NCBI RefSeq assembly: GCF_006345805.1
Contig: NC_043002.1
Coordinates: 86,428,001 to 86,492,000 of the forward strand
DNA: 64,000 nt
Direction: 5' to 3'
From: Octopus sinensis
Taxonomy: Eukaryota
The first letter of the stretch is position 1. Each line of letters begins with the position of its first letter. The translations under genes and the position numbers were made by a program. Below the pieces are notes generated by a model. It was not told the DNA's origin and made no database searches. It was given only the letters and a program-made list of their open reading frames with translations. Below, piece by piece: positions 5,694-60,491 of the stretch.

Positions 5694-5796
5694 GATACAC
5701 TAGCCAAGGAAAGAGAGTCTGAAGATGTTATAAAGTCCACTGAGAAACTTGAAAAAATACTACTGCAACTTAAAAGAGAGGTTTTGAATGCAAAAG
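5694..5796 (+). CDS. Gene 1 (coiled-coil protein), third-last coding exon, 103 nt, phase 0->1
   Basis: ttttctttaccag|GAT...AAAG|gtaggt; DTLAKERESEDVIKSTEKLEKILLQLKREVLNAK; splices in frame to 13237. Confidence 0.85.
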
Positions 5797-6042
5797 GTAG
5801 GTAAAAATTTGTCAGTGTGTTGTCATTGTAAGTTACTACTACTATTATGATGACGACAACAACAACAACAACAACTACTACTACTACTACTACTACTACA
5901 GTTGTTGCCATTGCCAAAGGACTACTTGAGCCATCTAGTTGTTGGTCTCCTACAAGGTTTCCTTCAAAACAGAACAACATGCAATTCTGTCCAGAGGCCC
6001 CAGGAGATGTTGACATCCTTGATACGTGTGTGTGTGTGTGTG

Positions 6043-6081
<39 letters not shown>

Positions 6082-6364
6082 TGTGTGTTGTATTTGTCCC
6101 TCATTACTTCTTGACAAGTGGTGCTGGTTTGTTTACACCCCCATAACTTAGCAGCACAATAAAAGACACTGATAGAATAAGTACCAGGCTTAAAAATATA
6201 AGTAGTGGGCTTGATTAGCTTGACTAAACTTTTCAAGGCAGTGCTCCAGCATAGCTGGAATCCAATGATTGAAACATGTGGAAGAGAAAAGATAAAAGAT
6301 TACCATATAGGTGCAGTCGTTACTGTGTGGTAAGAAGATTGCTTCTCAACTACTTGGTTCTGAG

Positions 6365-6582
6365 TTCATGGTGCAAACGGGAGTCCAGATGGCCTCTGTG
6401 CAAGGACAATCCGAACACAGACAGGTGTTGCAAGGAGTGACCGGTGGAGTGGAAATGGCGTGAGACCAGGGTGTCATTGCCGAAGCAGATGTCTCAGAGG
6501 TGTTCCGCGAACCGGTCAACCAAGCGGCATCCTGTTTGTCCGATGTACAGGGAATGGCAGAGAGAGCAGGAGATGCAATAGA

Positions 6583-6585
<3 letters not shown>
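6365..6585 (-). mobile_element. Penelope-like element remnant (GIY-YIG endonuclease fragment)
   Basis: IYCISCSLCHSLYIGQTGCRLVDRFAEHL*..VSRHFHSTGHSL matches the PLE GIY-YIG pattern (YIGxTxRxLxxRxxEH). Confidence 0.8.
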
Positions 6586-6636
<51 letters not shown>

Positions 6637-6744
6637 GACAGACTCCTTTTAGTTTCCATCTACCAAATCTATTCACAATGCCTTGGTTAGCCTGAGGCTA
6701 CAGTAGAAGACATTTGCCCCAGGTGTAAAATGTTTACAAAATAC

Positions 6745-7050
6745 TAATATAAGTAGATTATAGATTTATTATTTAATTCAAAGCAAAAATACCAAAGGTC
6801 CTTCATGGGCCAGAAGCTCATAAGGCCAGTTTCCAGGATTCTGTGGTGTAAATATTACAACCCAGGATGAGATGTTAGTCCATCACAGGAATACTTATTT
6901 GCAAGCTGAGTGAACTGTAGCTACATGAAATGAAGTGTTTTGCTCAAAAACACAACTCATTGCCCAGTTCAGGAATCAAAACCATAATCTTATGATCATG
7001 AGTTCAACACCCTAAGAAACTATGCCACATGCCTCCTCATAAGTTAATTA
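6745..7050 (-). mobile_element. tRNA-derived SINE (family B) with flanks, locally duplicated at 10593-10900
   Basis: Reverse complement of the family seen at 63248-63500; shares flanks and diagnostic variants with the 10593-10900 copy. Confidence 0.75.
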
Positions 7051-7593
7051 CTGTATATATATATATGATTTGAGATTTTATATTGTATATCTATAAGCAT
7101 TTTGACTTTTAAATATGAAATATAGGAATACATCTTGGCTTTTTCATCAGAATTTTGATAAATATTTGTATTCAATCTTAACTATTCCCATTATATTGTT
7201 ATATCAGCTTAACATTCATGTCTGATTGAGCCAGTTGCCACAGTAACTACCACCACCAACACCACCACCACAACCTCTACCATAGCATATTTAGACTAAT
7301 AATTTCAGCTTCTCCAATGATTCTTTATAGTGCTGCCCACTCTATCTGTTTGAAGAAGTCTAATGACAGGCTGAAGACATAATTAATTTAAACAAAGCCA
7401 TAATATCCATAATTAAATTTGTGTTGATATATTTAATGTGGTCAGTTTGAAAAATTTAATTAGAAATGACTAAAGTTATTTTTTAAATTTTTGCCAATTA
7501 TTCTGGCTCTTTATGTGCTGAGTCCAAATCCTGTCTAGGTGAATTTTTGCCTTGTATCACCAAAGGGCCTATATATTAAGCCACCAGCCAAGA

Positions 7594-9602
7594 GTGCTAT
7601 GTCTTTTTGTCCAACATCACATTGTCAAACTTCTTTTTGTCCACATCTTTTGGTCCAATGTCTTTTTGTCCAATGATTTTTTTTGTCCAATCTTTTGTCC
7701 AATTTTAAATAAACTCTTTAGAAAAGGTGAAAATCTCTAATGATATTTCACAGAACTATAATGAGCCTCGCTGTAAGATTGTTATTATCATTCTTTTTCC
7801 TTCTCTGTTAACAGTTTTACTTTCTCATTTACTTTCACTCCCTTTAGTATGGTACTGTATGTAGAGAGTGCTGCAAATTTAGTGTACATATTTTTAATTT
7901 ACCCATCCCGAAATAACAAAGTTCATAGTATCGACCAAAAACAAAAGAAAAGTAGTTGATGAAAGTAATTACATCTACGATTTTCATTCAAGAAATACAA
8001 AACTAGGAAAAGATTACTGGAAATGTGAGAAAAGAAGGCTATGTTCAGTGTGAATTTACATGGTAACGGAAAACAATGAACCAAAAATTATTTATTTTTC
8101 TAGTGAGCACCTTCATCCATCTGGTGTAGATTTGTTAAATGCTAGAAAGCAGATGCAGAAATAAAGCATAGGGTGGTGGAAAACATAGCAGCAAGTTCAC
8201 GTAGCATGATAGCAGTTAAGTTTACACAGCTGACAGAAGAGAATTGCTCTCAACTTCCTCATTTGCCTGTACTTTCAAGGACTATTCAAAGGTGCCAACA
8301 AAAAATTCTGGATTTCCCACTAATCCAGGGGCTAGAACTGGTTTTGAAATACCTGAAGAATATTGTAATGCTGATAATGGTGAACAGTTTCTGAGATACG
8401 ATTCAGGTATCAAGGATCAACAGTGCATACAAGTATTTGCATCAGAAAGTGCTCTTCGGGATATAGCATCATATCGAGTTTGGACATTTGATGGAACATT
8501 CAAAATTATGCCAGAACAGTGGTTTCAACTGTTTAGCATTCATGTACAAGTTAAATGTAGCAGTTTCCCCCAGGTCTTTGCATTACTGCTGAATAAAACA
8601 AAGAAGACATGAATTATTTTTCGAGCAATTGAAAATTATGTAACCTATTGCATATCTGCTAGATCTCATGGCAGATTTCCAAGTTGCAGTTCATAAAACA
8701 TTTAATTCATCATTCCCTAATTCACCTGTTGTGGCATGTTTGTTTCATTTGAACCTGTCAGTATTTCGAAAAATTACAGATTTAGACATCAAAGAAAAAT
8801 ACAATAAGGATTCTGAATTCTGTCTTAAAATTCGACGTTTTTCAGCATTAGCCTTCCTACCCATTGAAGATGTAGAAGAGGCCTATGAAAAATTAATTGA
8901 CAATGAAGAAATACCTGCTGAATTTATCGCCTACTTCATCTTGACTTACATAGGCATTGTGAGAGGACGTGGTGCTAGATGAAGGAGAGAACCACCTACA
9001 TTCCCGATAGCTGTATGGAATGTTAATCAATGTATTCTTCAAGATCTTCTCAGAACAAATAATGCTGCAGAGGGATTTCATTCTGTGATAAGGCATTTGG
9101 TAGGCGGAGCACATTTGAATATTTGGAAATTAATCAAAATTCTGAAGAAAGAGGAAGGGTTCGTTCAGGGTAAGATGACTCAAATTCTTCGAGGAGATCC
9201 GTCAAATTCATGTACACGATATCGTAGAATAACTGACTGCCTCAAAAGATTTGTCATTGAATATGGGTCAACTAGAAAAATTGATTTTTTGAAGAGTGTG
9301 GCATATAATTTGCATCAATTTTAAGTAATCATAATAAATCATCAGTTATATCATATTACTTTTTTAAAATGACTTTTTTTTCAAATACATTTTTCCACAG
9401 TATTTTACTTGAATCCTATCAATAAGATTCTCAATGATTATTTGGTTTTGATATTTTCTAAACTTGTTTTCTAAAGAGTTTATTTAAAATTGGACAAAAT
9501 GTTGTTAGACAAAACATCATCAGACAAAAAGACGTCAGACCAAAAGGTGTGGACGAAGTAATGTTGGACAAAAAGTGACATCAGACGAAGAGTTGGGTCA
9601 TG
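7594..9602 (+). mobile_element. Mutator/MULE DNA transposon, decayed, inserted into a SINE
   Basis: 9-bp TSD CAGCCAAGA at 7585-7593 and 9603-9611; imperfect ~130-bp TIRs built of TTGTCC(A) subrepeats with a near-identical inner core TTTGTCCAATTTTAAATAAACTCTTT. Confidence 0.9.
7905..9324 (+). pseudogene. FLYWCH + MULE DDE transposase, disrupted
   Basis: YIY..DYWKC..C..HxH (FLYWCH-like), WTFDGTFK, MADF..ACLFHL, RTNNAAEGFHS; in-frame stops and frameshifts. Confidence 0.88.
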
Positions 9603-9910: not shown

Positions 9911-10159
9911 CCTATCACTTTACATTACTGGCCTTGTGTGTAAGTCAGATTGGATGAGAGTACTGTAGAGTGGGAAGTAGCTTTATGCTAGGTGTTGAGA
10001 GGTTAAAGTATGAGAGAAGAGACAGCCACAGATTGCTTGCTGTAGATGAGATGCTTGACCACTTCATATCACATTACATAAGGATGGTAAGGCATAATAT
10101 ATGGATATACACAATATATTTATACATACATGTATGTGTGTGTGTGTAGATATGTATGT

Positions 10160-10410
10160 GAGGAGGTTCAAGGCTTAGTAATTAGGGTATCATACTCATG
10201 ATCACAAGATTGTGGTTTCAATCCCTGGACTTAATGATGCATTGTATTCTTGAGCAAAACACTTCATTTCACATTGCTCCCATCCGCTCAATAGAAAAAA
10301 TGAATAATCCTGCTGATAGACTGGCTTCCCTTCCATGTGGGTAATATATAGATCACAGAATCCTGAAAACCAGCCTTATGAACCTATGGCTCGGGAAGGA
10401 CCTTTGATCC
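10160..10410 (+). mobile_element. SINE family B
   Basis: GGCTTAGT..GGTTTCAATCCC head, TCTTGAGCAAAACACTTCATTTCACATTGCTCC core, GGCTCGGGAAGG tail. Confidence 0.7.
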
Positions 10411-10592
10411 TTTTTGATACACCTTTATCTTTTACCTTTTACTTGTTTCAGTCACTAGACTGTGGCCATGCTGGGGCACTGACTTGAAGAATTTTTATAT
10501 AACATCAGCAACTGCAAGATCACAGTATGAAAAGCTGCTGCAAATTGATGATGAAGACTTATACACACACACAAACACACACATAAGTATAT

Positions 10593-10900
10593 TAATATAA
10601 GTAGATTATAGAGTTATTATTTAATTCAAAGCAAAATTACCAAAGGTCCTTCATGGGCCAGAAGCTCATAAGACCAGTTTCCAGGATTCCATGGCGTATA
10701 TATTACACCCCAGGATGGGATGCTAGTCTATCACAGGAATACTCATTCGCAAGCTGAGTGAACTGTAGCAACATGAAATGAAGTGTTTTGCTCAAGAACA
10801 CAACTCATTGCCCAGTCCAGGAATCAAATGCATAATCTTATGATCATGAGTTCATCACCCTAAGAAACTATGCCACATGCCTCTACATAAGCTGACAACT
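10593..10900 (-). mobile_element. SINE family B with flanks (duplicate of 6745-7050)
   Basis: Direct repeat including non-SINE flanks. Confidence 0.75.
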
Positions 10901-10912
10901 GCAGAAATATAT

Positions 10913-10944
<32 letters not shown>

Positions 10945-11053
10945 AAATAATAAAGGTGAAAAATTGAATATTAATTTGATTAATATCAATTTAAAACCAA
11001 TGGTCTCACATATTGAGAAATCTGAAGTTTCAGAGAAAAGTATATTACATACA

Positions 11054-11177
11054 TATAAGTGGGATGACCTGTAAGTGGACATCCATTATGCTAGAAGAAG
11101 ATCCGCTATGGCCTTACCACTAAGAAAAGAAGCGGATCTTCTAGCATAATGGATGTCCACTTACAGGTCATCCCTCT

Positions 11178-11181
<4 letters not shown>
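11054..11181. repeat. Inverted repeat, ~51-54 bp arms, 23-nt loop
   Basis: GGGATGACCTGTAAGTGGACATCCATTATGCTAGAAG..ATCCGCT and its reverse complement from 11131. Confidence 0.9.
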
Positions 11182-11210
<29 letters not shown>

Positions 11211-13236: not shown

Positions 13237-13280
13237 AGGAATTCTCAAAAGATCTCACAACTATGTCGGACATGCAAGAG
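13237..13280 (+). CDS. Gene 1, penultimate coding exon, 44 nt, phase 1->0
   Basis: ttttatatttcag|AG...GAG|gtaaga; (E)EFSKDLTTMSDMQE. Confidence 0.85.
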
Positions 13281-22298: not shown

Positions 22299-22463
22299 AA
22301 AATACAGAAAAGAGACCAACTGACTGTTGACCAGATGGACGTTTCAAAAAACATCATTGATACAAACATCCAAATTGTAAACAATGTCAGTAAAAAAGTA
22401 CACAAACAACTGGAAACATTGGGAACATATTTGAAAGGCACTGAAATAAGGCGCCCAGACTAA
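22299..22463 (+). CDS. Gene 1, terminal coding exon, 165 nt including TAA
   Basis: ttttatctttaacttgcag|AAA; KIQKRDQLTVDQMDVSKNIIDTNIQIVNNVSKKVHKQLETLGTYLKGTEIRRPD*. Confidence 0.85.
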   Translation, partial: KIQKRDQLTVDQMDVSKNIIDTNIQIVNNVSKKVHKQLETLGTYLKGTEIRRPD

Positions 22464-22537
22464 GAGAATGGTTACACTTCAAACTGCACTGTGTATATGC
22501 ATGCATGCATGCATACATACATACATACATACATATT

Positions 22538-22739
22538 TGTTTTTGAAAATAGTGGGTTTTTTAACTGCAGCCCTCTTGTGAAATATGGCTTTGTGCAGCT
22601 CCCAGCAAACAGTTTTTGTGGAAAAGCTCTGCACGAATTTTGGGAGCTGTACTTTTGTGATCCTTTCTAACAATTCGCGTAAGAGTTCAACGGTCCCTAT
22701 CTGAAAGTTTGGGTTTTCTTTCAGAGTTTTGTTTCGATG
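22538..22739 (-). mobile_element. Inverted internal fragment of the adjacent Tc1 transposase gene
   Basis: Reverse complement of ~23188-23410 with an internal deletion; flanked on both sides by (CATA)n. Confidence 0.9.
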
Positions 22740-22855
22740 GGGAGATACATACATACATACATACATACATACACACATACACACACACACACATGCACGC
22801 ACACACACATACATACATACATACATACATACATACATACATACATTCATACATA

Positions 22856-24106
22856 CAGGGGTTGGAGAAAATAATGGAAACACCTGGCATCATAATTTTG
22901 AAATATATATAAAATCGTAAAAAGCTTGTTTATATTTATGTTTTTTTGATTTATTATTAGTGTTGCTTAATATGTTTTGCTAAAATTGCTGTTTCTTTTC
23001 AGATATCATCAGAAAGGGTAATTAAAATTAATTAAAATGACTGATCTATCAGACTTTCAGAGAGGTCAAATTGTTGGTATTCATATGGCAGGCACTAGCG
23101 TAACGGAAACAGCCGAAATGTTGTGTGTATTAAGAAGTACTGACTTGAAAGTAAAGACAGCCTTTGAGAAAGAGAGAAAAATCTCCGCATTGAAACAAAA
23201 CTCTGGAAGAAAACCAAAACTTTCAGATAGGGACCGTTGGACTCTTACGCGAATTGTTAGAAAGGATCACAAAAGTACAGCTCCCAAAATTTCTACAGAG
23301 CTTAATGACAACCTTAAGAACCCAGTTTCCACAAAAACTGTTTTCTGGGAGCTGCACAAAGCCATATTTCACAAGAGGGCTGCAATTAGAAACCCACTAT
23401 TTTCAAAAACAAATATTGCAAAGTGTTTAGAGTGGAGTAAAAACTTACAGAATTGGTCCCTAGAGCAGTGGAAGATTGTTATTTTCTCAGACTAGTCATT
23501 CTTTACCTTATTTCCAACCGCCAGCTGAGTATACATATGGAGACAGCCAAAAGAAACATTTGACCCAGACTGCCTTCTTCTAACTGTTAAACATGGAGGA
23601 GGATCTATGATGATGGGGGGGGGGGCTATATCTTGGAAATCCACCCGCCCAATGGTTTTCCTTCATGGCAGAATTAATAGACTATTTAAGCCTTTTATCT
23701 GATCAAATTCATCCTATGGTTGAGAAACTGTTTCTGGAGGGAAACACAATCTTTCAGGATGATAATGCACCAGTTCACACAGCTAAAGTTGTTACTGAAT
23801 GGCATGAGTAACATTCTAAAGAAGTTGAACATTTTATCTGGCCACCACAGTCCCCAGATCTCAATATTATCGAACATTTATGGTGCATTTTAGAAAAACA
23901 AGTAAGGAGTTGATATCCTCCACCATCATCACTACAAGAACTGGAGACTGTTTTAGCTGAAGAATGGACAAAAATTCCTTTGGAAACAATTCAAATTTTG
24001 TATGAGTCCATACCTCATAGAATTCAAGCCAAAGGCGGTTCTACCCCATATTAAAATTAATTTGTTTGAAATTTTAAGGTATTTCCATTATTTTGTCCAA
24101 CCCCTG
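22856..24106 (+). mobile_element. Tc1-type transposon, full length (1251 bp), DD36E spacing
   Basis: TA TSDs; 30-bp TIRs CAGGGGTTGG(A/C)..ATAATGGAAA(C/T)ACCT with 2 mismatches; transposase 23037-24054 with stops; VIFSD, FQDDNAP, SPDLNIIE. Confidence 0.93.
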
Positions 24107-24579
24107 TATGTTTATATACATATATGTGTGTGTGTGTATAGATATTGTTGTTCAATTCCAAGTTAGTCCTGTCTGAGCAGATTTATGATCTAAGGTAATC
24201 CAGCCACAATTATCCCAAGAATTATCTCATGAATAGTCTGTCTTGCTCAACATTATCTGACGTCCTTTTATTCTTAAGACAACAAAATGTAATTCGAGCA
24301 ATTTTGTCAGCTATTTCTAGCAGTTCTTGAAGTTACATACAGGGGCTCTCTTTATAGTTGTTCATAAGCGTTTGTGTGTGTATGTGGGTGGGTGCATGTG
24401 TGTGTGTCTGGTTGCACACATGCATGTGTGTATGTGTGAGTATCTATGTCATTATAGTTGTTTAATTCCAAGTTGGCCCTGACCAGTCTGACTATTGAGA
24501 GCAACTCAACAGTGATAGTTCCCAACTCTTTCAAGCATAGTATGTTCTGTACAACATCATTTCTTAAGATGTACTAACC

Positions 24580-24770
24580 AGGCGGTGAACTGGCAGAATT
24601 GTTAGCACACTGGATGGAATGCTTAGTAGTATTTCATCCATCGCTATGTTCTGAGTCCCTTTCACCCTTTTGGGGTCGATAAATTAAGTACCAGTTGAGT
24701 ACTGGGGTCAATGTAATCAACTATCCCCCTCCCACAAATTTCAGGCCTTGTGCATATAACAGAAAGGATT
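24580..24770 (+). mobile_element. SINE family C
   Basis: GGCGGTGAACTGGCAGAATTGTTAGC head; GGGGTCGATAAATTAAGTACCAGTTGAGTACTGGGGTC core. Confidence 0.75.
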
Positions 24771-25220
24771 ATTTCTTAAGATGGCAGGATGAAATTTGAG
24801 CAAGACTTGGCTTTTATTTATAGCGGGTTGAGTGGCCACTAAGGGCCAATATGTGAGTGTGTGTGTTTGTGTGTAGGTGTATATATATGTGTGTATGCAT
24901 CTATGAGTGTGCATATGTGTGTAAGGGTCTGTGTAGTGTTTTTGTTTTTATTCTCACTATTGTATTAATTATTTTATCTCTTTTATACGGTCAACAGTAA
25001 TAAAGGTTTTTCATCATATCTCCTGTAACAAAGTGAAGTAGTTTGTATATATTCGTAAAGTATTATATCAGTAGTCCATGCTGTAAGTTTTTGATGCCAT
25101 TGACTATACTAAAGAATAAAGAACTAGTACATAGTCTGTTCAATAAAATTTGAATAACAGTGTCATCATTTTATAGTTTTCCTTGCAACAAGAATCTCTC
25201 TTACCAGAGAGATGTGTGTA

Positions 25221-25253
<33 letters not shown>

Positions 25254-25254
25254 G

Positions 25255-26117
25255 ACATTAGAAAAAAAAACACCTTTTATCAATTCAAAATGAACAATTA
25301 AATTACACCATCTAGAAAATTACATATAATAGAAATATTAATATTAAAATAACAATAAAATGTCAAAGATTAAGTAAATTGCAAAAAAAAGAATAATAAT
25401 AACGTATATATATATATATATATATATAAGACCAAAGGGGTACAGGCGCCGCTATATATATATATATGTAAAAAAATACAAACTGGGACAAGAACGCAAA
25501 ACATTTAGAAGACGATACAAAAAACATGGACGGGACATTCGAAGCCTTCAATCTTCAGTCAAGAACCGGATCATCCTCACAATTTCGGCTGATTAATCTT
25601 GAGATTGCTCTGATCTGGCCAGCCCCAAAGGAAAATCTAAGCCAAGCGCATTAGATTCCTTGGAAGAAAACCTCGAATGTATACAAAACAAGGACAGAAA
25701 AACGGATGATGTTACACTAAGAATACAAAAATACATAAAAACATTAATGATAATAATAATAACAAAAACAGGACATCACAGACAGGCATCTTTCGACAGG
25801 ACGAGTAAACTTTGAGCTGGCGTGTTAGAAAAATGCCTTAGGGCAGAGAGAGAAAAAAATGTGTCTTGCCGCGACGACTGCTAAGCACGAAAGGCTGGCA
25901 ATCAGTCAGTCAGTCATGTGTGAGGAGAAGTGAGAGGAAAAGAGGGACAGAAAAAAGGAGATCAAGGAACAAAGGAGGAGGAGAAGAGAAAGAGACAGAT
26001 CAAAGTGGAGTGCAAAGTGTAAAAGGCAGAAATGTAGGAGAGAGACAGTGTTATAGAGTTGTACCAAGTTTAAAGAAATATGTACTTACATATAAGACCA
26101 AAGGGGTATGGGCGCTG

Positions 26118-26173
<56 letters not shown>

Positions 26174-26560
26174 AAAAAAATACAAACTGGGACAAGAACG
26201 CAAAACATTTAGAAGACAATACAAAAAACACGGATGGGACATTCGAAGCCTTCAATCTTCAGTCAAGAACCGGATCATCCTCGCAATTTCGGCTGATTAA
26301 TCTTGAGATTGCTCTGATCTGGCCAGCCCTAAAGGAAAATCTAAGCCAAGCACATTAGATTCCTTGGAAGAAAACCTCGAATGTATACAAAACAAGGACA
26401 GAAAAACGGACGATGTTACACGAATAAGAATACAATATACGTAAAAACAATTATGATAATAATAATAATAACAAAAACAGGACGTCACAGACAGGCGTCT
26501 TTCGACAGGACAAGTAAACTTTGAGCTGGCGTGTTAGAAAAATGCCTTAGGGCAGAGAGA
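25255..26560. mobile_element. Penelope-like terminal-repeat array (two ~420-460-bp direct repeats plus a purine-rich spacer)
   Basis: TATAAGACCAAAGGGGTA...AAAATGCCTTAGGGCAGAGAGA at ~25427-25850 and ~26091-26560; the preceding segment matches an arm of the 11221-11570 palindrome. The PLE assignment is inference. Confidence 0.6.
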
Positions 26561-26739
26561 TAGATAGATAGATAGATAATGATTGATAAATAGATATAGA
26601 TAGATAGATAGACTGATAGATAGATAAAGATATATATATATATAAGTGAAAAGTCGTATAGTTTTCTTGAAGCATTGTCTGTTAAATATGTCTTTTATTT
26701 GTTTTTTTCACTTTTTTTTAAACCAAAATAATACAGTGT

Positions 26740-26960
26740 ATTAAAAATACATGTCAATGGTTAGTACTTTTACTTGGTATTTCAATACTTCCAATATAGA
26801 ATTCATTACATCTGATAAACATGATTTTATACAGCATGTATGACTGCAGACATAATACTTGATCTGTCAAAAGCAGAAATACCGCACTCAAGATATCCAA
26901 ATAGCCACTGAAGCTACAGAAATAAACATTGGGAACTTGAGGATAAAAGAACATATTTCC
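26740..26960 (-). mobile_element. Penelope-like GIY-YIG remnant
   Basis: LYKIMFIRCNEFYIGS resembles the PLE pattern IYKITCxxCxxFYIG. Confidence 0.5.
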
Positions 26961-27386
26961 ATTAACAAGTACAACATGTTGACAAAAGATTCAAACTGCA
27001 TGCAATTGTTTGGTTATTATAGCATTGCAAAGCAAGCCTTCATACACACACAACAGAACAGAGATGTCAGCTAAAAATCCTTTGTCTCCAAAGATTTCCA
27101 GAAGAAGGTGTTCTAATCCTGAAATATTGAAATAACAGGAAAAAAATAAATACTAACTATCAACCTGTATTATTCATTTTTAATAACTTCCATTGTTTTG
27201 GCCTCACACTGAGAGTGAACTTGGTTGACAGAAACTGAAAGAAGCCTGTTGTGTGTGTATGTGTGGGGGGTGACTTTTTGTCTGTGGTTGTCCCCACCAC
27301 TGCTTGACAACTGTTGTTGGTGTGTTTACATACCTAAAGAGACCAATAGAATAAATACCAGGATTTACATGAAAAATATGAACCAT

Positions 27387-27781
27387 GGCGCAGGAGTGGC
27401 TGTGTGGTAAGTAGCTTGTTAACCAATCACATGGTTCCAGGTTCAGTCCCACTGCGTGGCATCTTGGGCAAGTGTCTTCTGCTATAGCCCTGGGCCGACC
27501 AATGCCTTGTGAGTGGATTTGGTAGACGGAAACTGAAAGAAGCCTGTTGTATATATATATATGTATGTGTTTGAGTGTCTGTGTTTGTCCCCCTAGCATT
27601 GCTTGACAACCGATGCTGGTGTGTTTATATCCCTGTCACTTAGCGGTTCGGCAAAAGAGACCGATAGAATAAGTACTGGGCTTACAAAGAATAAGTCCCA
27701 GGGTCGATTTGCTTGACTAAAGGTGGCGCTCCAGCATGGCCGCAGTCAAATGACTGAAACAAGTAAAAGAGTAAAAGAGTA
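27387..27781 (+). mobile_element. SINE family A, well preserved
   Basis: Complete GGCGCAGGAGTGGCTG head through (GTAAAAGA)n tail. Confidence 0.9.
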
Positions 27782-27787
27782 TGGTCA

Positions 27788-27978
27788 ATTCATTCAACTA
27801 AAAAAACTCTTCAAGACAGAGCCCCAGCATGGCCACAGTCTAATGACTGAAACAAGTAAAAGATAGAAGTGTGTAAATATATATATATATAATTATATAT
27901 ATATATATATATGTGTAGCAGAACTACATAATACATATCCAAAGTGAATTGGTAGATGGAAACTGAAAGAAGGCCTTC

Positions 27979-28017
<39 letters not shown>

Positions 28018-28161
28018 ACACACACACACATATATATATATATACATATATATGTGTGTGTGTGTATATATGAAGGCCTTCTTTCAGTTTCCATCTACCA
28101 AATCCACTTGCAAGGCTTTGGATATGTATTATGTAGCTCTGCTACATATATATATATATAG

Positions 28162-28220
<59 letters not shown>

Positions 28221-28318
28221 TATATATATTTACACACTTCTATCTTTTACTTGTTTCAGTCATTAGACTGTGGCCATGCTGGGGCTCTGTCTTGAAGAGT
28301 TTTTTTAGTTGAATGAAT
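27788..28318. repeat. Fold-back palindrome of SINE-mosaic arms around a CA/TA/TG spacer
   Basis: Arms 27788-27980 and 28070-28318 are reverse complements apart from TA-tract length and one small indel. Confidence 0.92.
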
Positions 28319-28340
28319 ATATATATGTATATATATATAC

Positions 28341-28390
<50 letters not shown>

Positions 28391-28658
28391 GTATATGTTT
28401 GTGTGTCTGTGTTTATCCCCACCAGCATTGCCTGATAACCGATGCTGGTGTGTTTACATCCCCATATCTAAGTGGTTCTGCAAAAGAGACTGATAGAATA
28501 AGAACTAGGCTTACAAAGAATAGGTTCTGAGGCCGATTTGCTCAACTACACGCAATGCTCCGGCATGGCCACAATCAAATGACTGAAACAAATAAAAGAA
28601 TATATATAAAACAGTTGTTTTTAGAATGTTAAAAAAGAAAAAAATCTCAATGAAGAAT

Positions 28659-28823
28659 TCAAGATTCCTTTATTTTTTCAATTTCTCCAAAACTGTCTTC
28701 AAATCTTTGCAACCAACCATAAATTTTTTCATAAATATAACTCATGGTTTTCCCACAAGAAGCCATTGTTTCTGATATGTTTTCCAAATGTTCTTCTGTG
28801 TTCAGTTCTCTATGCTGAGTTGA
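28659..28823 (-). CDS. Gene 2, terminal coding exon, 165 nt including TGA
   Basis: gctaattttag|TCA; STQHRELNTEEHLENISETMASCGKTMSYIYEKIYGWLQRFEDSFGEIEKIKES*. Confidence 0.83.
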   Translation of the reverse strand, partial: STQHRELNTEEHLENISETMASCGKTMSYIYEKIYGWLQRFEDSFGEIEKIKES

Positions 28824-30279: not shown

Positions 30280-30323
30280 CTCCACCATGAATTCTGTCAT
30301 TTTCCGCATCATCTGCAACAGTT
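30280..30323 (-). CDS. Gene 2, penultimate coding exon, 44 nt, phase 1->0
   Basis: catttttattctag|AA...GAG|gtaggt; (E)LLQMMRKMTEFMVE. Confidence 0.85.
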
Positions 30324-33197: not shown

Positions 33198-33300
33198 CTC
33201 TAAGTTCATTCACCTGGCTTTGTAGCTTTTTAGCCAGCTCCCCGTCATTGTCAAGTTTCTGCTGCCAGTATTTGCACATAATTTCTTTCTCTTCCAAAGC
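33198..33300 (-). CDS. Gene 2, third-last coding exon, 103 nt, phase 0->1
   Basis: ctaatcacag|GCT...AGAG|gtaagc; ALEEKEIMCKYWQQKLDNDGELAKKLQSQVNELR. Confidence 0.87.
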
Positions 33301-36190: not shown

Positions 36191-38329
36191 GGAACTAGAT
36201 CATTGACATACAAGAATACAATAATTACAATAATTTTATGTTTTCATTATTCAGTGTGGATGTACATATAGATAATCTGGTTGTACATAGTGTCTGAAGA
36301 AGAAAAACCTTTCACAATTCTTCTATAGCAAATCAAGGATCAGTTAGCTAAGTGGGATTCATTCCTCACCTGGTTAGTTGATGATGGTGATCAAATATTG
36401 CAGTTCTAGAGGGAGATAGTTATTCTCAATATGAAGAAAGGTAGAAATTCTGCTGTTTACCAAATGTAAATTTTGGGTGCATAAGAGATGCAATGGGATT
36501 ACAACCAGGCTGACTGAGAAGAGAAACTTTGTATGTAGCAAATGCACAAATGTAGTTAGCAATAAGTTCTTGCATTTAAAGGAGTTCCTAAGTATTTAAT
36601 AATTGCTGCTGCTACCAATATCACCACCAACAACAATAACAGCATGACCACTGCTACCACAACCATCTGCAGTTTCATGCTATCATTAATTGTAGACTAA
36701 TTTTCTATAGACTGTCAAGGGTAAATTTTAAGTTAGTAGAATAAGTTTGTGCCTCAAAGTTAAAATAAATGAATCTTCCTTCCAAATACTTGCCTCTCTA
36801 AGTTGAGAATTGATTAACATTATGGCACGAATTTTATTTAACTCGGAATATATATTCTCTTCAATACATTCTATCTTGTTAGCATTAACAATTAAAGCTT
36901 TAATATAAGCCTTACGGTTATTTTCAATTCTTGCATTCCATTGAGCCTGAACAAATAAGAAAATGTCAGAGCATTAACATCATCTCTTCTTAATCATAAT
37001 CTATGCAATGAAGGCAACACTTTAACTCTCAAACAAATAGAAAATGTAACAAAACTCAGTATTTCATGATTCTGAAATATATTATTCTTGTTAAAAGGGG
37101 CAACAGATGGCAGAATTGGCAAAGAGCCCAACAAAAAGCATTAATGTATTTGGTTACCTCCTTTTACATTCTGAGTTCATTCCCCAGGATGATATATTGA
37201 CTCTGTCATGATATGAACTTAGAAATATGTAGCATTTAAGTACCAGTGGCAGAGTTGGTTTGGATCAACTCTATTCCTGAAAGAAATATGGCTATATGCC
37301 AACATTATTGAAAGGTAATGAAATACCATTGATCATAGCATACAGGATTGAATACTGTTAAGTATTTAGTTCTGTTCCTTAACATTGAAGTTAGAAAGGG
37401 ACAGTGCAAGGACTGTGAAGAGGAAGAAGGAATGGTCCAATGCCTGAAAAAGAATCAACTTTGTATTGCCTTCAAAGTCAACAAAACACACAGGGTAACT
37501 CAATCAACAGTACTTATACAAGTACTTCTGCTCCTTCCTATCATCCACTATGTAATAAAAAAGAGAGTACACATAACAAGTTTCATACAGAATTTTTTCC
37601 ATTGAGAGAGTTAGAATCTAAAGAATACTTTGACATTTGAATGAAATTAAAAGCATTTTAATTTCAATTCTGACTTCAGTTGCAATATTTTTTTTCCATT
37701 TCTTAATTCAATGCCTATAAAAGAGTCAACTTTGCACTTTCTCAACAAAACACAGGGCAATTCAATCAACTGTACTCATTCCCTACAAATTAGTTGGCAA
37801 TGTGTCTAGTTAAGAATAATTTTTTTAGCAATGTCATGTTTCCAAAGGTTTAGTTTAAAGACCCACTTGTGTCACATTCCTGTTTAATCCCACAGCACAA
37901 CACTGGGAAAATGTCTTCTACCAAAGATTCAGGTCAATCAAAGCCTTGTGAATGGAATTCAATAGCTAAATTTGGTTAGTTATGCTTAAAATATGAAAGT
38001 TCATCAAGATACATTTTATGAAAAGAGAATCTGAGCCAATGAGGGAGCCTTTATGCTAACACTAAAAATAGTAGCCCAATTATATGAAGTTTAAACAGAA
38101 ATTATGTGAAGTCCATTGGACGAATTGTTCTTCAAGAGTAAACTTGATTCACTACCTAGTTTAACACCACTGCCTTGCTGTTGTTTGCTTTTAGAAGAGT
38201 TCACTCTTTTGGAAGAGTCAGGACAGGATTTCCAGTCTGAGGATAATTATCTTCCTTTTTTTTTCTACTAGAGCAAGGGACCCTTAAAAAGGTTCATGAA
38301 CCATTTAACTTTCTCCCCCTAACTATGCT

Positions 38330-41991: not shown

Positions 41992-42071
41992 CAATTTCTT
42001 TTTTTTACTTTCAAGATTTCTTGCAGCAAATTTTACTTCATCTTCTATAATTGCTTCTTTCTGACTTATGT
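41992..42071 (-). CDS. Gene 2, exon f, 80 nt, phase 1->0
   Basis: gtttctcttgcag|AC...TTG|gtattt; ISQKEAIIEDEVKFAARNLESKKKKL. Confidence 0.83.
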
Positions 42072-43892: not shown

Positions 43893-44031
43893 ATGTGAAC
43901 ATTTTTGATGATGTGTTATATAATTTTTCTACTTTATAGTGTTTGACCTGGAGGCGTTTGAAACTGGGAATCCTTTTCAATACAACCTTCATTACATTTT
44001 CTTTGGTCTCTTCAATTTCATCAATACCAGC
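43893..44031 (-). CDS. Gene 2, exon e, 139 nt, phase 0->1
   Basis: aaatgcag|GCT...ACAT|gtaagt; AGIDEIEETKENVMKVVLKRIPSFKRLQVKHYKVEKLYNTSSKMFT(Y). Confidence 0.85.
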
Positions 44032-47206: not shown

Positions 47207-47338
47207 CTGTTCTTCTATAATATGTGCTGCTGATTCTGTAAGTCTCCTTTTAAAGTCTTCTTTAAACATCTTTATATCATTTCCTAATTTCTCAATAATT
47301 TCACTCATACCAAGGGCTTCCTTTTGAATTCGTTCAGC
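47207..47338 (-). CDS. Gene 2, exon d, 132 nt, phase 0->0
   Basis: catcttcag|GCT...CAG|gtaagt; AERIQKEALGMSEIIEKLGNDIKMFKEDFKRRLTESAAHIIEEQ. Confidence 0.88.
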
Positions 47339-52359: not shown

Positions 52360-52495
52360 TTTGAGTTTGTTTTCTCTATAATATTGCAATCTTTTTTCTG
52401 CTTCTGCTTGTAAAGATTTTCGAAAATAATCTTGATGTTCATGAATCAGCCTTATTTCCAATGTTAAATCCCTTTTCTTATTTTCAAGTGATTGT
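52360..52495 (-). CDS. Gene 2, exon c, 136 nt, phase 2->0
   Basis: ctcttatttcag|A...AAA|gtaaga; QSLENKKRDLTLEIRLIHEHQDYFRKSLQAEAEKRLQYYRENKLK. Confidence 0.88.
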
Positions 52496-57600: not shown

Positions 57601-58014
57601 TTGGGTTTGCATTAGACAGACTCTCCTACCATGCATTCTCTACATTTAGCAGCCTTCCATAATAGCATTTCCAAGCCTCTTTCTTTGCAGAATCACTACT
57701 AACAGCATGTGAACCATCATCCATACTGACACACTTCTCTTCTACGACATCATGATTTTCTATATTAAAGTATTAAAAGCAAGGTAGTAGCAGAATTAGT
57801 GCAGCACCAGACAGAATATTATCCAGTTTTGTGTTTCCTCCATTTATGTTCTGAGTTCAAATTTCTTAGGGGTTAACTACTTTTCATTTTTAAATAAATA
57901 CCAATCACAAGCATGTATTGATACAGCTGTAACTGTGCATCCCATCCTCCCCTCAAAATTTGTTACTTAATGTCCACATCTGGAACTATATTTTCTTACA
58001 ACTAAATGACTTAC

Positions 58015-58086
58015 ATATTCTCTTGTAGTATTGTTAGTCTTTCACCGTATTCTGTAATAAAAGCCTCCAATTCTTGTACTCTCTCT
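58015..58086 (-). CDS. Gene 2, exon b, 72 nt, phase 2->2
   Basis: ttttaatcttcag|A...AATAT|gtaagt; ERVQELEAFITEYGERLTILQEN(I). Confidence 0.85.
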
Positions 58087-58574
58087 CTGAAGATTAAAAC
58101 AAACAAAAAGTAAGCTGTAATTAACTTGGAATTTAATTGTATATGAGGTAATATCAACTTTAACAAAAAAATGTAAGTAGATCTTGTGTCCAGAACAAGT
58201 TCAAAATATAATTTTTGATTCTATGACATAACAGAACAAACACCACAGAATACATTCTCTTTTAATTCAATGCCAGAAATAAGGTCACCACAACATGTCC
58301 TTCCAGAATATAAAGCCATTTTCTTTACTGCCTTCTTTAAAGTTTAATTTCTATCACTACAGATCAATAATATTATTTCTCATGATATCTATTCTCCACA
58401 ACTTTTTATCTATTCTCTACACCTTTATCAGAAAGATAATTTCAAAAGTACATATAACCTATTTCAGTTATTTTCATTTGGATTTATAATTAACTGTAAT
58501 TGAGATTTAGTCTTATGATAATTCATGTCATAAAATAAGCATAGATACCAGCATCAGCAAGCAGTGGTGTCATC

Positions 58575-59265
58575 ATTGCCGGGTATCTTGGTAGATTCTT
58601 CCTTTTTGCCTTCGGCCCAATGCGTCCATCCTGCCAACAAAGCACGAGGAGTTCTGTTTTTGATTCGACGGTCATTCGGAATGCTCACAGCAGCCATATT
58701 CCTACCGCTCTATGTCACGCTGGTGAGACCTATATTGGAGTATGGGATTTAAGCCTCTTCTCCTTATCTCCTCAAAGACATACATCATCTCAAAAAAGTC
58801 CAGAAGCTGGCTACCTGCATGGTTCTTGGTCTCAAGCATTTGTCTTATGAAGAAAGGCTGAAGACGCTCGACCTTTATTCTCTCGAAAAATGCCACTGCA
58901 GTGGTGATCTCATTCTCGCTCACAACATCATAAGCGGAAAGTGTGACCTCTTGAAAGAGCTATTCTTCACTCCTGCTCCAGAGTGTGGGCTGTGGGGTCA
59001 CTCCGAAAAGCTCTATCTATGACGATTTCATCTCAATCGAAGGAGAGGGGTTTTCTCCGTCCGAGTTGCGGATCAATGGAATAAGCTGCCGAACGAGATA
59101 GTGAAGGTGCCAACGACCGCTCAGTTCAAAGTCTCTCTTGACCAGAAATGGCCTGAACTCTTTGTATGACCACCCTCCCTGTACATAACTCCCTGTCCCC
59201 CTACATGGCTTTGCTTTTGCTTTTTGAGCCAATAAAAATTGAATTGAATTGAATTGAAATTGAAT
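58575..59265 (+). mobile_element. CR1/L2-group LINE 3' end
   Basis: LYVTLVRPILEYG..VQKLAT..SYEERLKTLDLYSLE..RGDL-like..LWGH..FSVRV..WNKLP; AATAAA then a (GAATT)n tail. Confidence 0.88.
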
Positions 59266-59529
59266 TGCTATCTTTCTTTTCATTAGTAGCTGCATTTCAC
59301 ACTTTTCCATGCTAGTATGGGTTGACAGTTCTTCAAAAACAGTATTCTATCAAGATGTCCTTCTTGCTACCAATCCTTTTAATTGTGTCGTAAGATACAC
59401 ATGGATGCAGTGTGTCCATTTTAAAACATGTGTCATAAAATATAGTAAGATAGTTATGAAGTTTGAGATACAGTCATAACTATAGCAATGGAAACAAAAT
59501 ATCACCTGTAATATCTTTTCGTAAAGTAA

Positions 59530-59745
59530 GACAGTGAGCTGACAGAATTGTTACCACCCCAGACAAAATGCTTTGTGGTATTTCTTCCAACTTTACATTC
59601 TGAGTTTAAATGCTGTCAGGGTCAACTTTGCCTTTCATCCTTTCGGGGTCGATAAAATAAGTATCAGTTTTGCACTAGGGTCGATGTAATTGACTTACTC
59701 CTCTCTGAAATAACTGGCCTTGTACCAAAATTTGAAACCAATATC
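59530..59745 (+). mobile_element. SINE family C
   Basis: GAGCTGACAGAATTGTTA head; CTTTGCCTTTCATCCTTTCGGGGTCGATAAAATAAG. Confidence 0.75.
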
Positions 59746-60019
59746 TTTTCTTAAAGTTGAACAAAGATTTGTTTTTGTTTTTGTTTTCCATGGTTTAATC
59801 AGGAGAAAGACAATAGCCATGACCTTATTGCAGGTTGTTGAGACAAGTGAGAGGAAAGAGAGGTTCTTATCATATTATCAGACTTGAGATCATATTATCA
59901 AACCTGAACCTTGCAAAACAAATATCTTAACCACAAAATCATTTCTGTACAAGAATTACCTAAAATTTATTTCAGAGGAATTTTATCAAAATGGTTAAAT
60001 ATATTGGTTTGAAATTTTG

Positions 60020-60215
60020 GCAGCAAGTTTGGAGGAAGGGTTAAGTCAATTACCAGCAAGTCCAGGGGAGGGTTTAAGTCAATTACCTTGACCCTAGGAC
60101 TTAACTGGTACTTATTTTATCGGCTCTGAAAGGATGAAAGGCAAAGTCAACCTCAGCAGAATCTGGACTCAGGACATAAAGATTGTGTGCTAAAGATTCA
60201 GTCAGCTCGCCACCA
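60020..60215 (-). mobile_element. SINE family C
   Basis: Reverse complement core GAAAGGATGAAAGGCAAAGTCAACCTCAGCAGAATCTGGACTCAG. Confidence 0.72.
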
Positions 60216-60380
60216 TAAAATTGTTAAATATATTAATAGTGAAAATTTATTGAGTAAGATCACTGTTCCCATTATTTCAATGTAATTTCTATAAATAAAT
60301 GTGGAACCTAAAGAATATATTTCTGCTTTATTTTCTCGTAATTTTTACATAAAATTTAAGAAATATCAAATGCTACTTAC

Positions 60381-60491
60381 TTACAATCATCTTTTAAAAT
60401 GCGCAATCTTTTTTCCAATTCATTAAGTAAAGCCTGAAGCTCAATTTTCTTTTCTCTTGCACTCTCCAACTGAGCTTTAATATCTGCCAGT
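60381..60491 (-). CDS. Gene 2 (coiled-coil protein), exon a, 111 nt, phase 2->2
   Basis: catttctgtggcag|A...TGTAA|gtaagt; LADIKAQLESAREKKIELQALLNELEKRLRILKDDC(K). Confidence 0.85.

What the first reader, a model, noticed from the sequence alone, without database searches (positions are those of the whole stretch)
5694..60491. Hidden tail-to-tail pair of coiled-coil genes with identical terminal exon architecture
Seen: canonical AG/GT exons chain in frame on both strands. The last three coding exons of gene 1 (+; 5694-5796, 13237-13280, 22299-22463) and gene 2 (-; 33300-33198, 30323-30280, 28823-28659) have exactly the same lengths and phases: 103 nt 0->1, 44 nt 1->0, 165 nt to stop (54 aa each). 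Amino-acid identity is low but in register: K5 E6 L26 V30; E1 M13 E15; Q-x-R, T, K-[VI]-[HY]-x-x-L. The stop codons lie about 6.2 kb apart. Inference: an ancient inverted duplication whose copies diverged nearly beyond sequence recognition while intron positions stayed fixed. Gene 2 supplies about 326 aa of continuous helical/coiled-coil sequence over 9 exons. None of this appears as a coherent ORF in the track. The family is not recognised with confidence; CCDC175/CCDC178-type proteins are an unverified guess to test.
Basis: partly seen in the sequence, partly recalled or inferred. Interest (0 to 1): 0.8.

Follow-up and report, generated by a model that had tools for sequence, protein, structure and literature searches.

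The report
Tail-to-tail CCDC175 gene duplicates in octopus
The window (Octopus sinensis) holds the 3' ends of two convergent, already annotated genes that are diverged duplicates of CCDC175, an uncharacterised coiled-coil gene whose 633-residue core and exon lengths match in octopus, limpet, annelid and a vertebrate.

Summary
Gene 1 (+) and gene 2 (-) both end in exons of 103, 44 and 165 nt with the same phases, and their stop codons lie 6,196 bp apart. The window is Octopus sinensis chromosome CM016864.1. Both genes are existing RefSeq models with misleading names: XP_036360017.1 (764 aa, "uveal autoantigen...-like") and XP_036360018.1 (405 aa, "myosin-11-like", N-terminally truncated).

In O. 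bimaculoides the two orthologues (764 and 765 aa) each have 23 coding exons, and 21 of them are identical in length. A gapless 687-residue alignment gives 21.7% identity, against 8% in shifted registers. The inverted duplication is therefore confirmed and covers the whole gene.

The family is CCDC175:
- An amphioxus member carries that name.
- A vertebrate member lies next to JKAMP and L3HYPDH, as in human.

The exon run ...111, 72, 136, 132, 139, 80, 153, 103, 44 is also found in limpet and vertebrate. Twenty of 24 members have exactly 633 core residues with no indels. The shared architecture is thus a family trait, not a mark of this pair alone.

Gene 2 is the fast copy (dN/dS about 1) but has no stops or indels. 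The duplication predates the Argonauta/Octopus split. Function is unknown; a length-critical heptad coiled-coil rod is inferred.

The parts
5694..5796 (+). Gene 1 (XP_036360017.1, CCDC175 orthologue), coding exon 21 of 23, 103 nt, phase 0->1
   Evidence: AG/GT flanks. The translation equals residues 662-695 of P0002. The exon number comes from the O. bimaculoides orthologue map.
13237..13280 (+). Gene 1, coding exon 22, 44 nt, phase 1->0
22299..22463 (+). Gene 1, terminal coding exon 23, 165 nt including stop TAA
   Evidence: The annotated gene range ends at window 22463 (L001 61082 maps to window 22463). The stop begins at nt 163, where other phyla have a donor site.
22464..28658 (.). Convergent intergenic region with both 3' UTRs, 6,195 bp; contains a Tc1/Tc3-type transposase relic
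   Evidence: Poly(A)-signal hexamers lie 558 and 568 nt after the gene 1 stop and 1,475 nt after the gene 2 stop. HTH_Tnp_Tc3_2 matches at 23022-23495.
28659..28823 (-). Gene 2 (XP_036360018.1, fast-evolving CCDC175 paralogue), terminal coding exon 23, 165 nt including stop TGA
   Evidence: It is 51/54 aa identical to O. bimaculoides and 48% identical to the Argonauta neighbour gene.
30280..30323 (-). Gene 2, exon 22, 44 nt
33198..33300 (-). Gene 2, exon 21, 103 nt
36794..36946 (-).
   Evidence: Isoform X4 has 714 aa = 765 - 51.
41992..42071 (-). Gene 2, exon 19, 80 nt
43893..44031 (-). Gene 2, exon 18, 139 nt; encodes the family-invariant proline motif (R-I-P-S-F)
   Evidence: P559 is an invariant column.
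47207..47338 (-). Gene 2, exon 17, 132 nt
52360..52495 (-). Gene 2, exon 16, 136 nt
58015..58086 (-). Gene 2, exon 15, 72 nt
60381..60491 (-). Gene 2, exon 14, 111 nt (not 107); the more upstream exons lie beyond the window end
   Evidence: Exons 13, 12 and 10 were found in L001 at window-equivalent positions above 64000.

Best explanation
The window carries the 3' parts of two convergent protein-coding genes of Octopus sinensis. They are paralogues produced by an inverted, tail-to-tail duplication of the single ancestral CCDC175 gene in the octopod lineage.

Shown:
- Gene 1 is the conservative copy. It has 764 aa, is 92% identical between two Octopus species, has dN/dS of 0.26 in its last three exons, and scores higher against limpet, annelid and amphioxus proteins than against gene 2.
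- Gene 2 is the fast copy. It has about 765 aa in O. bimaculoides. The O. sinensis RefSeq model of 405 aa is N-terminally truncated.
- Gene 2 sits on a stem branch of 3.4-5 substitutions per site, and its dN/dS is about 1 between the two species. It has nevertheless kept an open frame, all splice sites, every exon length, and the three residues invariant across the family.
- Both proteins are almost entirely alpha-helical with a 3.5-residue hydrophobic repeat, so they are long heptad coiled coils.
- The family keeps a core of exactly 633 residues without indels, and largely the same exon lengths, from octopus to limpet, annelid, tunicate, amphioxus and vertebrates.

Inferred:
- Selection acts on length and heptad register rather than on side chains. 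This fits a rod that must span a fixed distance, or pack in register as a dimer or in a periodic assembly. A 633-700-residue coiled coil would be about 94-104 nm long.
- After the duplication, gene 2 either became a specialised, for example tissue-specific, variant of that rod, or became an in-register heterodimer partner of gene 1.

The biochemical function of CCDC175 is not known in any organism.
For: Identity of the locus and genes:
-.

Paralogy:
- BLASTP gives E = 2e-9 in a collinear match that ends at the boundary of the 103-nt exon.
- The Smith-Waterman score has z = 7.4-8.2 against heptad-preserving and block shuffles, and the reversed sequence scores 150 against 221 observed.
- The exon lengths of the O. 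bimaculoides orthologues are identical in 21 of 23 exons.
- The gapless 687-aa alignment gives 21.7% identity, against 8.2% mean and 12.5% maximum for shifted registers; 13 of 21 exons are individually at least 2.5 SD above shuffles.

Family:
- 56 HMMER hits in a library of 1.84 billion proteins. Many cover about 700 residues with equal spans in query and target.
- Named members come from Patella, Owenia, Liolophura, Branchiostoma (one named 'CCDC175-like'), Phallusia and Macrostomum.
- A vertebrate member, P0054, lies beside genes with the JAMP and Pro_racemase Pfam domains. The human and mouse gene order is GPR135-L3HYPDH-JKAMP-CCDC175-RTN1 (10.1101/212696).
- Exon lengths are shared with Patella (exons 3-22 identical), Owenia (same total, three introns lost, one moved) and the vertebrate (nine consecutive exons, 111...44, identical).
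- 20 of 24 members have 633 core residues with 0 insertions and 0 deletions.

Structure:
- AlphaFold2 predicts helix for residues 37-756, interrupted only by short non-helical breaks at about 57-63, 103-106, 252-259, 326-333, 427 and 584-587.
- The best hydrophobic period is 3.5 residues, z = 32.

Gene 2 is functional but fast:
- omega = 1.02 over 398 codons, against 0.26 for gene 1.
- Under neutral simulation, P(no stop) = 0.0004.
- At the indel rate of the flanking introns, about 37 indels would be expected in the coding sequence; none is seen.
- Gene 2 keeps N178, I189 and P559 and 33 of 89 conserved columns.

Dating of the duplication:
- Octopod gene 1 and gene 2 form a clade with 99% SH-aLRT support.
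- Both copies, and the Argonauta gene 1 protein and its neighbour gene, end at the same residue. The stop begins at the position of the donor site seen in limpet and annelid.
- The same tail-to-tail arrangement is present in O. bimaculoides and in Argonauta hians.
- There is no adjacent paralogue in Patella, Owenia, amphioxus or the vertebrate.
Against: Missing data:
- No expression or splice-junction data were examined. The gene models are computational RefSeq predictions.
- Gene 1's upstream exons could not be read in O. sinensis itself. The gene spans 134.8 kb, which was too long to fetch, and the own-genome tools were shut. The full architecture therefore rests on the O. bimaculoides orthologue, which has the same protein length and 92% identity.
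- No human or mouse CCDC175 sequence was compared directly.

Alternative readings the data allow:
- dN/dS of about 1 is also what relaxed constraint would give.
- Both octopod lineages are long branches, so their grouping could be inflated by long-branch attraction.
- The AU test does not resolve the order of the duplication and the Argonauta split (p = 0.32). That order rests on the Argonauta synteny.

Limits of the mechanism:
- The ruler or heterodimer mechanism is inference only. There is no Pfam model, no solved structure and no functional literature.
- The AlphaFold2 model has low confidence (pLDDT 62, pTM 0.20) and shows several helix breaks. The rod may therefore be folded back rather than 100 nm long.
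Confidence: 0.85

Rival explanations
1. Coincidence: two unrelated coiled-coil genes happen to share terminal exon sizes, and the weak similarity only reflects coiled-coil composition.
For: BLASTP on the 103-aa tails alone finds no in-register match. Coiled coils are known to give spurious similarity. The profile search against PDB returns only generic myosin, keratin and SMC hits.
Against: 21 of 23 exon lengths are identical. In-register identity is 21.7%, against at most 12.5% in 140 shifted registers, including multiples of 7. The score lies 7-8 SD above heptad-preserving shuffles. Both proteins retrieve the same family, and each is the other's best non-orthologous hit.
Confidence: 0.01
2. 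Gene 2 is a decaying or non-functional duplicate (a pseudogene, or a transcribed relic), and its intact frame is a leftover.
For: dN/dS is 1.02 between O. sinensis and O. bimaculoides. The O. sinensis RefSeq model is truncated to 405 aa. Gene 2 keeps only 33 of 89 conserved family columns, against 53 for gene 1. Exon 20 has a weak GC donor, and many exon-skipping isoforms are predicted.
Against: There is no stop codon, although about 8 would be expected under neutrality (P = 0.0004). There is no indel in 1,194 nt, against about 37 expected at the flanking-intron rate. All splice sites are intact in two species. The last exon is 94% identical between species and recognisable in Argonauta. Exons 10 and 12 are intact upstream of the false start codon. 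The invariant residues N178, I189 and P559 are kept. The copy has survived since before the Argonauta/Octopus split.
Confidence: 0.07
3. The duplication is much older, pre-cephalopod or pre-molluscan. Gene 2 would be an ancient paralogue lost elsewhere, and its grouping with octopod gene 1 would be long-branch attraction.
For: Gene 1 scores higher against limpet, annelid and amphioxus proteins (148-178 bits) than against gene 2 (93 bits). Both octopod branches are long and were flagged by the tree tool.
Against: Gene 2's best hit outside its own orthologues is gene 1. The octopod clade has 99% SH-aLRT support in two taxon samples. Both copies share a derived end: the C-terminal tail exon is lost and the stop begins at the former donor site. 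The two copies are physically adjacent in three octopods. The four other phyla examined have no adjacent paralogue.
Confidence: 0.07

Closest known systems
CCDC175 (coiled-coil domain-containing protein 175; human C14orf38) and its invertebrate orthologues
   Same: There is significant full-length similarity to members that include an amphioxus protein named CCDC175-like. A vertebrate member lies in the JKAMP/L3HYPDH neighbourhood. The 633-residue core is the same. Nine consecutive exon lengths (111, 72, 136, 132, 139, 80, 153, 103, 44) are shared with the vertebrate gene, and twenty with the limpet gene.
   Different: The octopods examined have two convergent copies, whereas the other loci examined have no adjacent second copy. 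Both octopus copies lack the low-complexity C-terminal tail exon seen in limpet and annelid. RefSeq names them after unrelated coiled-coil proteins. One copy evolves at dN/dS of about 1.
Synaptonemal-complex coiled-coil proteins with 'unconventional conservation' (Kursel, Cope and Rog 2021, eLife, PMC8598163)
   Same: The evolutionary signature is the same: fast sequence divergence with conserved length and coiled-coil layout, and indels selected against (for the paper; for this family).
   Different: There is no sequence relationship and no evidence of a meiotic role. Conservation here is stricter (exactly 633 residues) and reaches across Bilateria, not only within genera.
CCDC39/CCDC40 axonemal 96-nm ruler (from general knowledge, Oda et al. 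2014)
   Same: It is a long heptad coiled coil whose length is the functional parameter, and it works as a pair of related chains. A 633-700-residue rod would measure roughly 94-104 nm.
   Different: There is no detectable sequence similarity, and the PDB profile search gave only generic coiled-coil hits. Localisation of CCDC175 to cilia or flagella is not established. The resemblance is an analogy, not a membership claim.

Membership tests
CCDC175 family | Significant end-to-end sequence similarity to proteins recognised as CCDC175 | tested here: met
   P0002 matches the Branchiostoma cluster P0021 at E = 1.7e-35 over 700 residues, and that cluster contains XP_066280104.1 'CCDC175-like'. It matches the vertebrate P0054 at E = 1.2e-7 in a library of 1.84 billion proteins.
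CCDC175 family | A vertebrate member occupies the CCDC175 locus (next to JKAMP and L3HYPDH) | tested here: met
   In L007, P0054 is followed by a gene with the JAMP domain (PF05571) and then one with Pro_racemase (PF05544). The human and mouse order is GPR135-L3HYPDH-JKAMP-CCDC175-RTN1 (10.1101/212696).
CCDC175 family | Exon-intron architecture shared with the vertebrate gene | tested here: met
   Vertebrate: 70, 80, 112, 136, 229, 123, 110, 82, 137, 111, 72, 136, 132, 139, 80, 153, 103, 44, 154, 62, 30. Octopus: 151, 80, 112, 136, 78, 55, 99, 56, 64, 110, 82, 73, 64, 111, 72, 136, 132, 139, 80, 153, 103, 44, 165.
CCDC175 family | Direct reciprocal best match to human or mouse CCDC175 | not tested
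CCDC175 family | A curated domain model (Pfam) | not testable with these tools
   No Pfam model matches any of 10 members, which include limpet, annelid, amphioxus, tunicate and vertebrate proteins.
   None of the names retrieved mentioned CCDC178. No CCDC178 sequence was compared.
Inverted (tail-to-tail) tandem gene duplication | Two adjacent paralogues on opposite strands with converging 3' ends, conserved in related species | tested here: met
   The stops are 6,196 bp apart in O. sinensis and about 7 kb apart in O. bimaculoides. In Argonauta hians the two annotated genes end about 1.5 kb apart. For paralogy.
Canonical heptad coiled coil | 3.5-residue hydrophobic periodicity over a long predicted helix | tested here: met
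   The best period is 3.5 residues, both in the family profile (z = 32) and in each octopus paralogue. AlphaFold2 predicts residues 37-756 as helix apart from short breaks. The oligomeric state was not tested.

The most novel reading that the evidence does not exclude
CCDC175 is a molecular ruler or register-locked rod. Its 633-residue heptad core has been held to the exact residue, and largely to the exact exon, since the bilaterian ancestor, even though sequence identity has fallen to about 20%. In octopods the duplicated, near-neutrally evolving copy would pair in register with the conservative copy as a heterodimer, or would replace it in one tissue such as testis. Only its length, heptad pattern and a few anchor residues would then remain under selection.
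Probability: 0.3. Interest if true: 0.7.

Novelty: new member of a known kind. Interest (0 to 1): 0.5.

Why it matters
For genome annotation:
- The result gives two misnamed octopus gene models their true identity as CCDC175 paralogues.
- It shows that the O. sinensis gene 2 model lacks about 360 N-terminal residues.

For biology:
- The pair is a clean natural experiment. Two copies of one coiled-coil gene have evolved side by side at very different rates, and not a single residue of length has changed.
- Together with the 633-residue core seen in protostome and deuterostome members, this points to selection on length and heptad register for a protein that has no known function in any animal, including humans.
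- That makes a concrete hypothesis testable: CCDC175 may act as a length-critical rod.

Tried and rejected
- **Own-genome tools.** Gene 1's upstream exons in O. sinensis could therefore not be read. The look-up of encoding contigs also returned no DNA, because the gene spans 134.8 kb. I used the O. bimaculoides orthologue instead.
- **Domain and structure searches.** Pfam scans of both peptides, both full proteins and 8 relatives gave nothing above threshold. PDB sequence searches with single proteins gave nothing. The family profile gave only generic coiled-coil hits in the variable middle region, which I rejected as homology.
- **BLASTP of the two 103-aa tails.** The only hit was out of register. 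Homology becomes detectable only with the full proteins.
- **MAFFT of four sequences.** It placed spurious gaps in the middle of the proteins. The exon map and the 24-sequence alignment show that the true alignment is gapless.
- **Per-exon dN/dS of gene 2.** This had too little power to show positive selection. Exons 17 and 21 have omega = 1.06 (Fisher p = 1).
- **AU test** of the order of the duplication and the Argonauta split: inconclusive (p = 0.32). Synteny settled the question instead.
- **Literature.** No paper mentions the octopus accession numbers. No functional study of CCDC175 was found. One broad search was uninformative.
- **Fold search** was not run, because the all-helix, low-confidence model would give meaningless matches.

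Full report
**1. Checking the observation**

All have AG acceptors and GT donors, lengths of 103, 44 and 165 nt, and the same phases. Each gene ends after 54 codons in its last exon. The stop codons are 6,196 bp apart.

The gene 2 chain needed two corrections:
- The most upstream exon in the window is 111 nt (60491-60381). A 107-nt version breaks the frame.
- A 153-nt exon at 36946-36794 was missed because it has a GC donor.

With these changes, the ten gene 2 exons in the window give 377 residues. These equal the C-terminus of a database protein letter for letter.

**2. What the sequences are**

A protein search with the spliced gene 2 peptide returned XP_036360018.1, 'myosin-11-like' of Octopus sinensis, 405 aa. 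Its locus places the window on chromosome CM016864.1 of assembly GCA_006345805.1, where record position = 86,428,000 + window position.

The convergent neighbour listed there ends exactly at window 22463 and encodes 764 aa. A search padded to that length returned XP_036360017.1, 'uveal autoantigen with coiled-coil domains and ankyrin repeats-like'.

So neither gene is hidden. Both are RefSeq models with consecutive accession numbers, named after unrelated coiled-coil proteins.

Gene 1 spans 134.8 kb, so only its last three exons lie in the window. Gene 2 starts beyond the window end.

**3. Are they paralogues?**

The 103-aa tails alone give no BLASTP match in register. The full proteins do:
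- They give one collinear match, P0001 68-302 against P0002 427-661 (E = 2e-9). It stops exactly at the boundary of the 103-nt exon in both proteins.
- The local alignment score of 221 lies 7.4-8.2 SD above shuffles that keep composition, heptad class, or 7- and 14-residue blocks. The reversed sequence scores 150.

I could not read gene 1's upstream exons in O. sinensis. I therefore fetched the O. bimaculoides orthologues with their DNA:
- gene 1: XP_052824491.1, 764 aa, locus L002
- gene 2: XP_014776530.1, 765 aa, locus L003

Exact splice mapping gave 23 coding exons for each:
- gene 1: 151, 80, 112, 136, 78, 55, 99, 56, 64, 110, 82, 73, 64, 111, 72, 136, 132, 139, 80, 153, 103, 44, 165
- gene 2: 139, 95, then the same 21 lengths

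A gapless alignment of exons 3-23 (687 residues) has 21.7% identity and 46% positives. In 140 shifted registers the mean identity is 8.2% and the maximum 12.5%. The duplication therefore covers the entire gene, and no indel has occurred in 687 residues.

The O. sinensis gene 2 model is N-terminally truncated. Exon 12 continues in frame upstream of its supposed ATG, and exon 10 lies 6 kb further up.

**4. The family**

Pfam and PDB sequence searches were empty. A profile search of PDB gave only generic coiled-coil hits.

An exhaustive HMMER search with gene 1 found 56 relatives. Many are 740-850 aa long and align over about 700 residues with equal spans in query and target. Named members come from:
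- Argonauta, Patella and the chiton Liolophura
- the annelid Owenia
- Branchiostoma, where one member is called 'CCDC175-like'
- the tunicate Phallusia
- the flatworm Macrostomum

One hit, P0054, lies on a vertebrate-type locus. It is followed by a JAMP-domain gene and a proline-racemase-type gene. In human and mouse the order is GPR135-L3HYPDH-JKAMP-CCDC175-RTN1 (10.1101/212696). CCDC178 was not tested.

**5. A frozen architecture**

| Species | Coding exon lengths (nt) |
|---|---|
| Patella | 61, 86, 112, 136, 78, 55, 99, 56, 64, 110, 82, 73, 64, 111, 72, 136, 132, 139, 80, 153, 103, 44, 163, 359 |
| Owenia | 61, 86, 112, 136, 78, 154, 56, 174, 82, 73, 64, 111, 208, 132, 139, 80, 184, 116, 163, 497 |
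| Vertebrate (P0054) | 70, 80, 112, 136, 229, 123, 110, 82, 137, 111, 72, 136, 132, 139, 80, 153, 103, 44, 154, 62, 30 |
| Amphioxus | four exons only (270, 153, 911, 1027) |

- In Patella, exons 3-22 are identical in length to both octopus genes.
- In Owenia the lengths sum to the same total, with three introns lost and one moved.
- In octopus (both copies), limpet, annelid and the vertebrate, the stretch from exon 3 to the 44-nt exon sums to 1,899 nt, which is 633 codons.
- In a 24-member alignment, 20 members have exactly 633 residues in this stretch, with no insertion or deletion. The four exceptions are a deletion in a shorter model and three insertions; the two longest-studied insertions, a proline-rich 78-residue stretch and a 10-residue stretch, look like annotation errors.

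It shows membership. It is not in itself evidence for a local duplication.

**6. When and how the pair arose**

- Trees place gene 2 with octopod gene 1 (99% SH-aLRT support in two taxon samples). Gene 2 sits on a stem of 3.4-5 substitutions per site.
- Both octopus copies end at the same residue, and so do the Argonauta gene 1 protein and its neighbour gene. The first base of the stop codon is nt 163 of the last exon. That is exactly where limpet and annelid have a phase-1 donor site followed by a tail exon (T|AA and T|GA in octopus, against G|gt). This is a shared derived loss of the tail. It is most simply explained if it happened before the duplication.
- The tail-to-tail arrangement is present in O. 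bimaculoides.
- It is also present in Argonauta hians. There, a convergent neighbour 1.5 kb downstream of gene 1 has a 165-nt last exon that is 48% identical to gene 2's (E = 1e-10), plus a match to exon 20.
- The duplication therefore predates the Argonauta/Octopus split. The AU test alone could not show this (p = 0.32).
- Patella, Owenia, amphioxus and the vertebrate have no adjacent paralogue.

**7. Evolutionary regime**

Between O. sinensis and O. bimaculoides:
- Gene 1's last three exons have dN/dS = 0.26.
- Gene 2's exons 13-23 have dN/dS = 1.02, with dS = 0.14.

Yet gene 2 shows no decay:
- It has no stop codon, where neutral simulation expects about 8 (P = 0.0004).
- It has no indel, where the rate in 250-nt intron flanks predicts about 37 events.
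- All its splice sites are intact.
- It keeps the three residues invariant across the family, N178, I189 and P559.

Only the last two exons look clearly constrained in sequence (omega 0.24-0.33). Selection therefore preserves frame, length and pattern rather than side chains.

**8. Likely mechanism**

AlphaFold2, run on a single sequence, predicts helix for residues 37-756 of gene 1, interrupted by short non-helical breaks at about 57-63, 103-106, 252-259, 326-333, 427 and 584-587. Confidence is low (pLDDT 62).

The hydrophobic profile of the family alignment has its strongest period at exactly 3.5 residues (z = 32), and so does each octopus paralogue. These are long heptad coiled coils.

A fixed 633-residue core at about 20% identity is the 'unconventional conservation' described for synaptonemal-complex proteins (PMC8598163). 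Here it is in a stricter form.

I infer that CCDC175 works as a rod whose length and register matter. A 633-700-residue coiled coil would be about 94-104 nm long if continuous. Octopus gene 2 would then be either a specialised variant of gene 1 or its in-register partner.

This step is inference. No paper found gives CCDC175 a function, and no expression data were available here.

**9. Verdict**

- The pair itself is an ordinary, already annotated, lineage-specific duplication of a named but uncharacterised family.
- The unusual part is the family-wide invariance of core length and exon architecture, and the contrast in evolutionary rate between the two copies.

Noticed in passing
window 371-4056 (+), with related pieces at 56412-56949 (-): Two tandem, partly degraded copies of a non-LTR retrotransposon sit at 371-4056. 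They carry a reverse transcriptase with the YADD motif (RVT_1, E = 1.5e-19) followed by a cysteine-rich PHD-like segment. This explains the GC-rich first 4 kb of the window (GC 0.47). Another reverse-transcriptase relic lies in a gene 2 intron at 56412-56949 (-).
   Followed up: partly
window 1536-2743 (-), 4060-5292 (-), 61836-62433 (+): Long open frames run through roughly 150-nt tandem repeat units that encode 'HPCQPPLLVKTCWGKRNRNRIEP'-like peptides. They lie next to the retrotransposon copies, and the same repeat recurs near the other end of the window. It is probably the repetitive tail of a mobile element.
   Followed up: no
window 23022-23495 (+), 43040-43381 (+), 62376-63203 (+): DNA-transposon relics are present. 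Tc1/Tc3-type transposase HTH domains lie in the intergenic region between the two stops and in a gene 2 intron. A mariner-type Transposase_1 relic lies near the window end.
   Followed up: partly
window 8220-9324 (+): Three consecutive open frames of 112-130 aa lie in the gene 1 intron and include a 'FLRYDSG' segment. They have no Pfam match and may be a degraded transposase.
   Followed up: partly
L001 9941-10018 (beyond the window end, window-equivalent about 73.5 kb): The start codon of the O. sinensis gene 2 RefSeq model is an internal Met inside exon 12. O. bimaculoides has Ile at that position. The open frame continues upstream and exon 10 is present, so the 405-aa model is truncated.
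   Followed up: yes
O. bimaculoides proteins P0003, P0008-P0014: Both genes have many predicted isoforms that skip whole exons. Gene 1 isoform X3 lacks the 132-nt exon 17. Gene 2 isoforms lack the 72-nt exon, the 153-nt exon or the 44-nt exon, and loss of the 44-nt exon shifts the frame and gives a different C-terminus.
   Followed up: partly
L001 against L003, gene 2 exons and their 250-nt intron flanks: Gene 2 coding sequence differs more between the two Octopus species (13.0% of nucleotides) than the aligned flanking intron sequence does (8.2%). Gap placement in the intron alignments may understate the intron figure, so this hint of positive selection is unresolved.
   Followed up: partly
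L005 (Branchiostoma lanceolatum) 10001-13316: The amphioxus CCDC175 gene has only four coding exons (270, 153, 911, 1027 nt), although it keeps the 633-residue core. This is massive intron loss in a gene whose introns are otherwise conserved.
   Followed up: no
window, many sites (e.g. 22479-22889, 31521-32336, 42249-42773, 44813-45291): (TGTA/CATA)n-type and related microsatellite arrays read as long 'MYVCMYVC' open frames on both strands. They account for many of the long spurious ORFs in the window.
   Followed up: no
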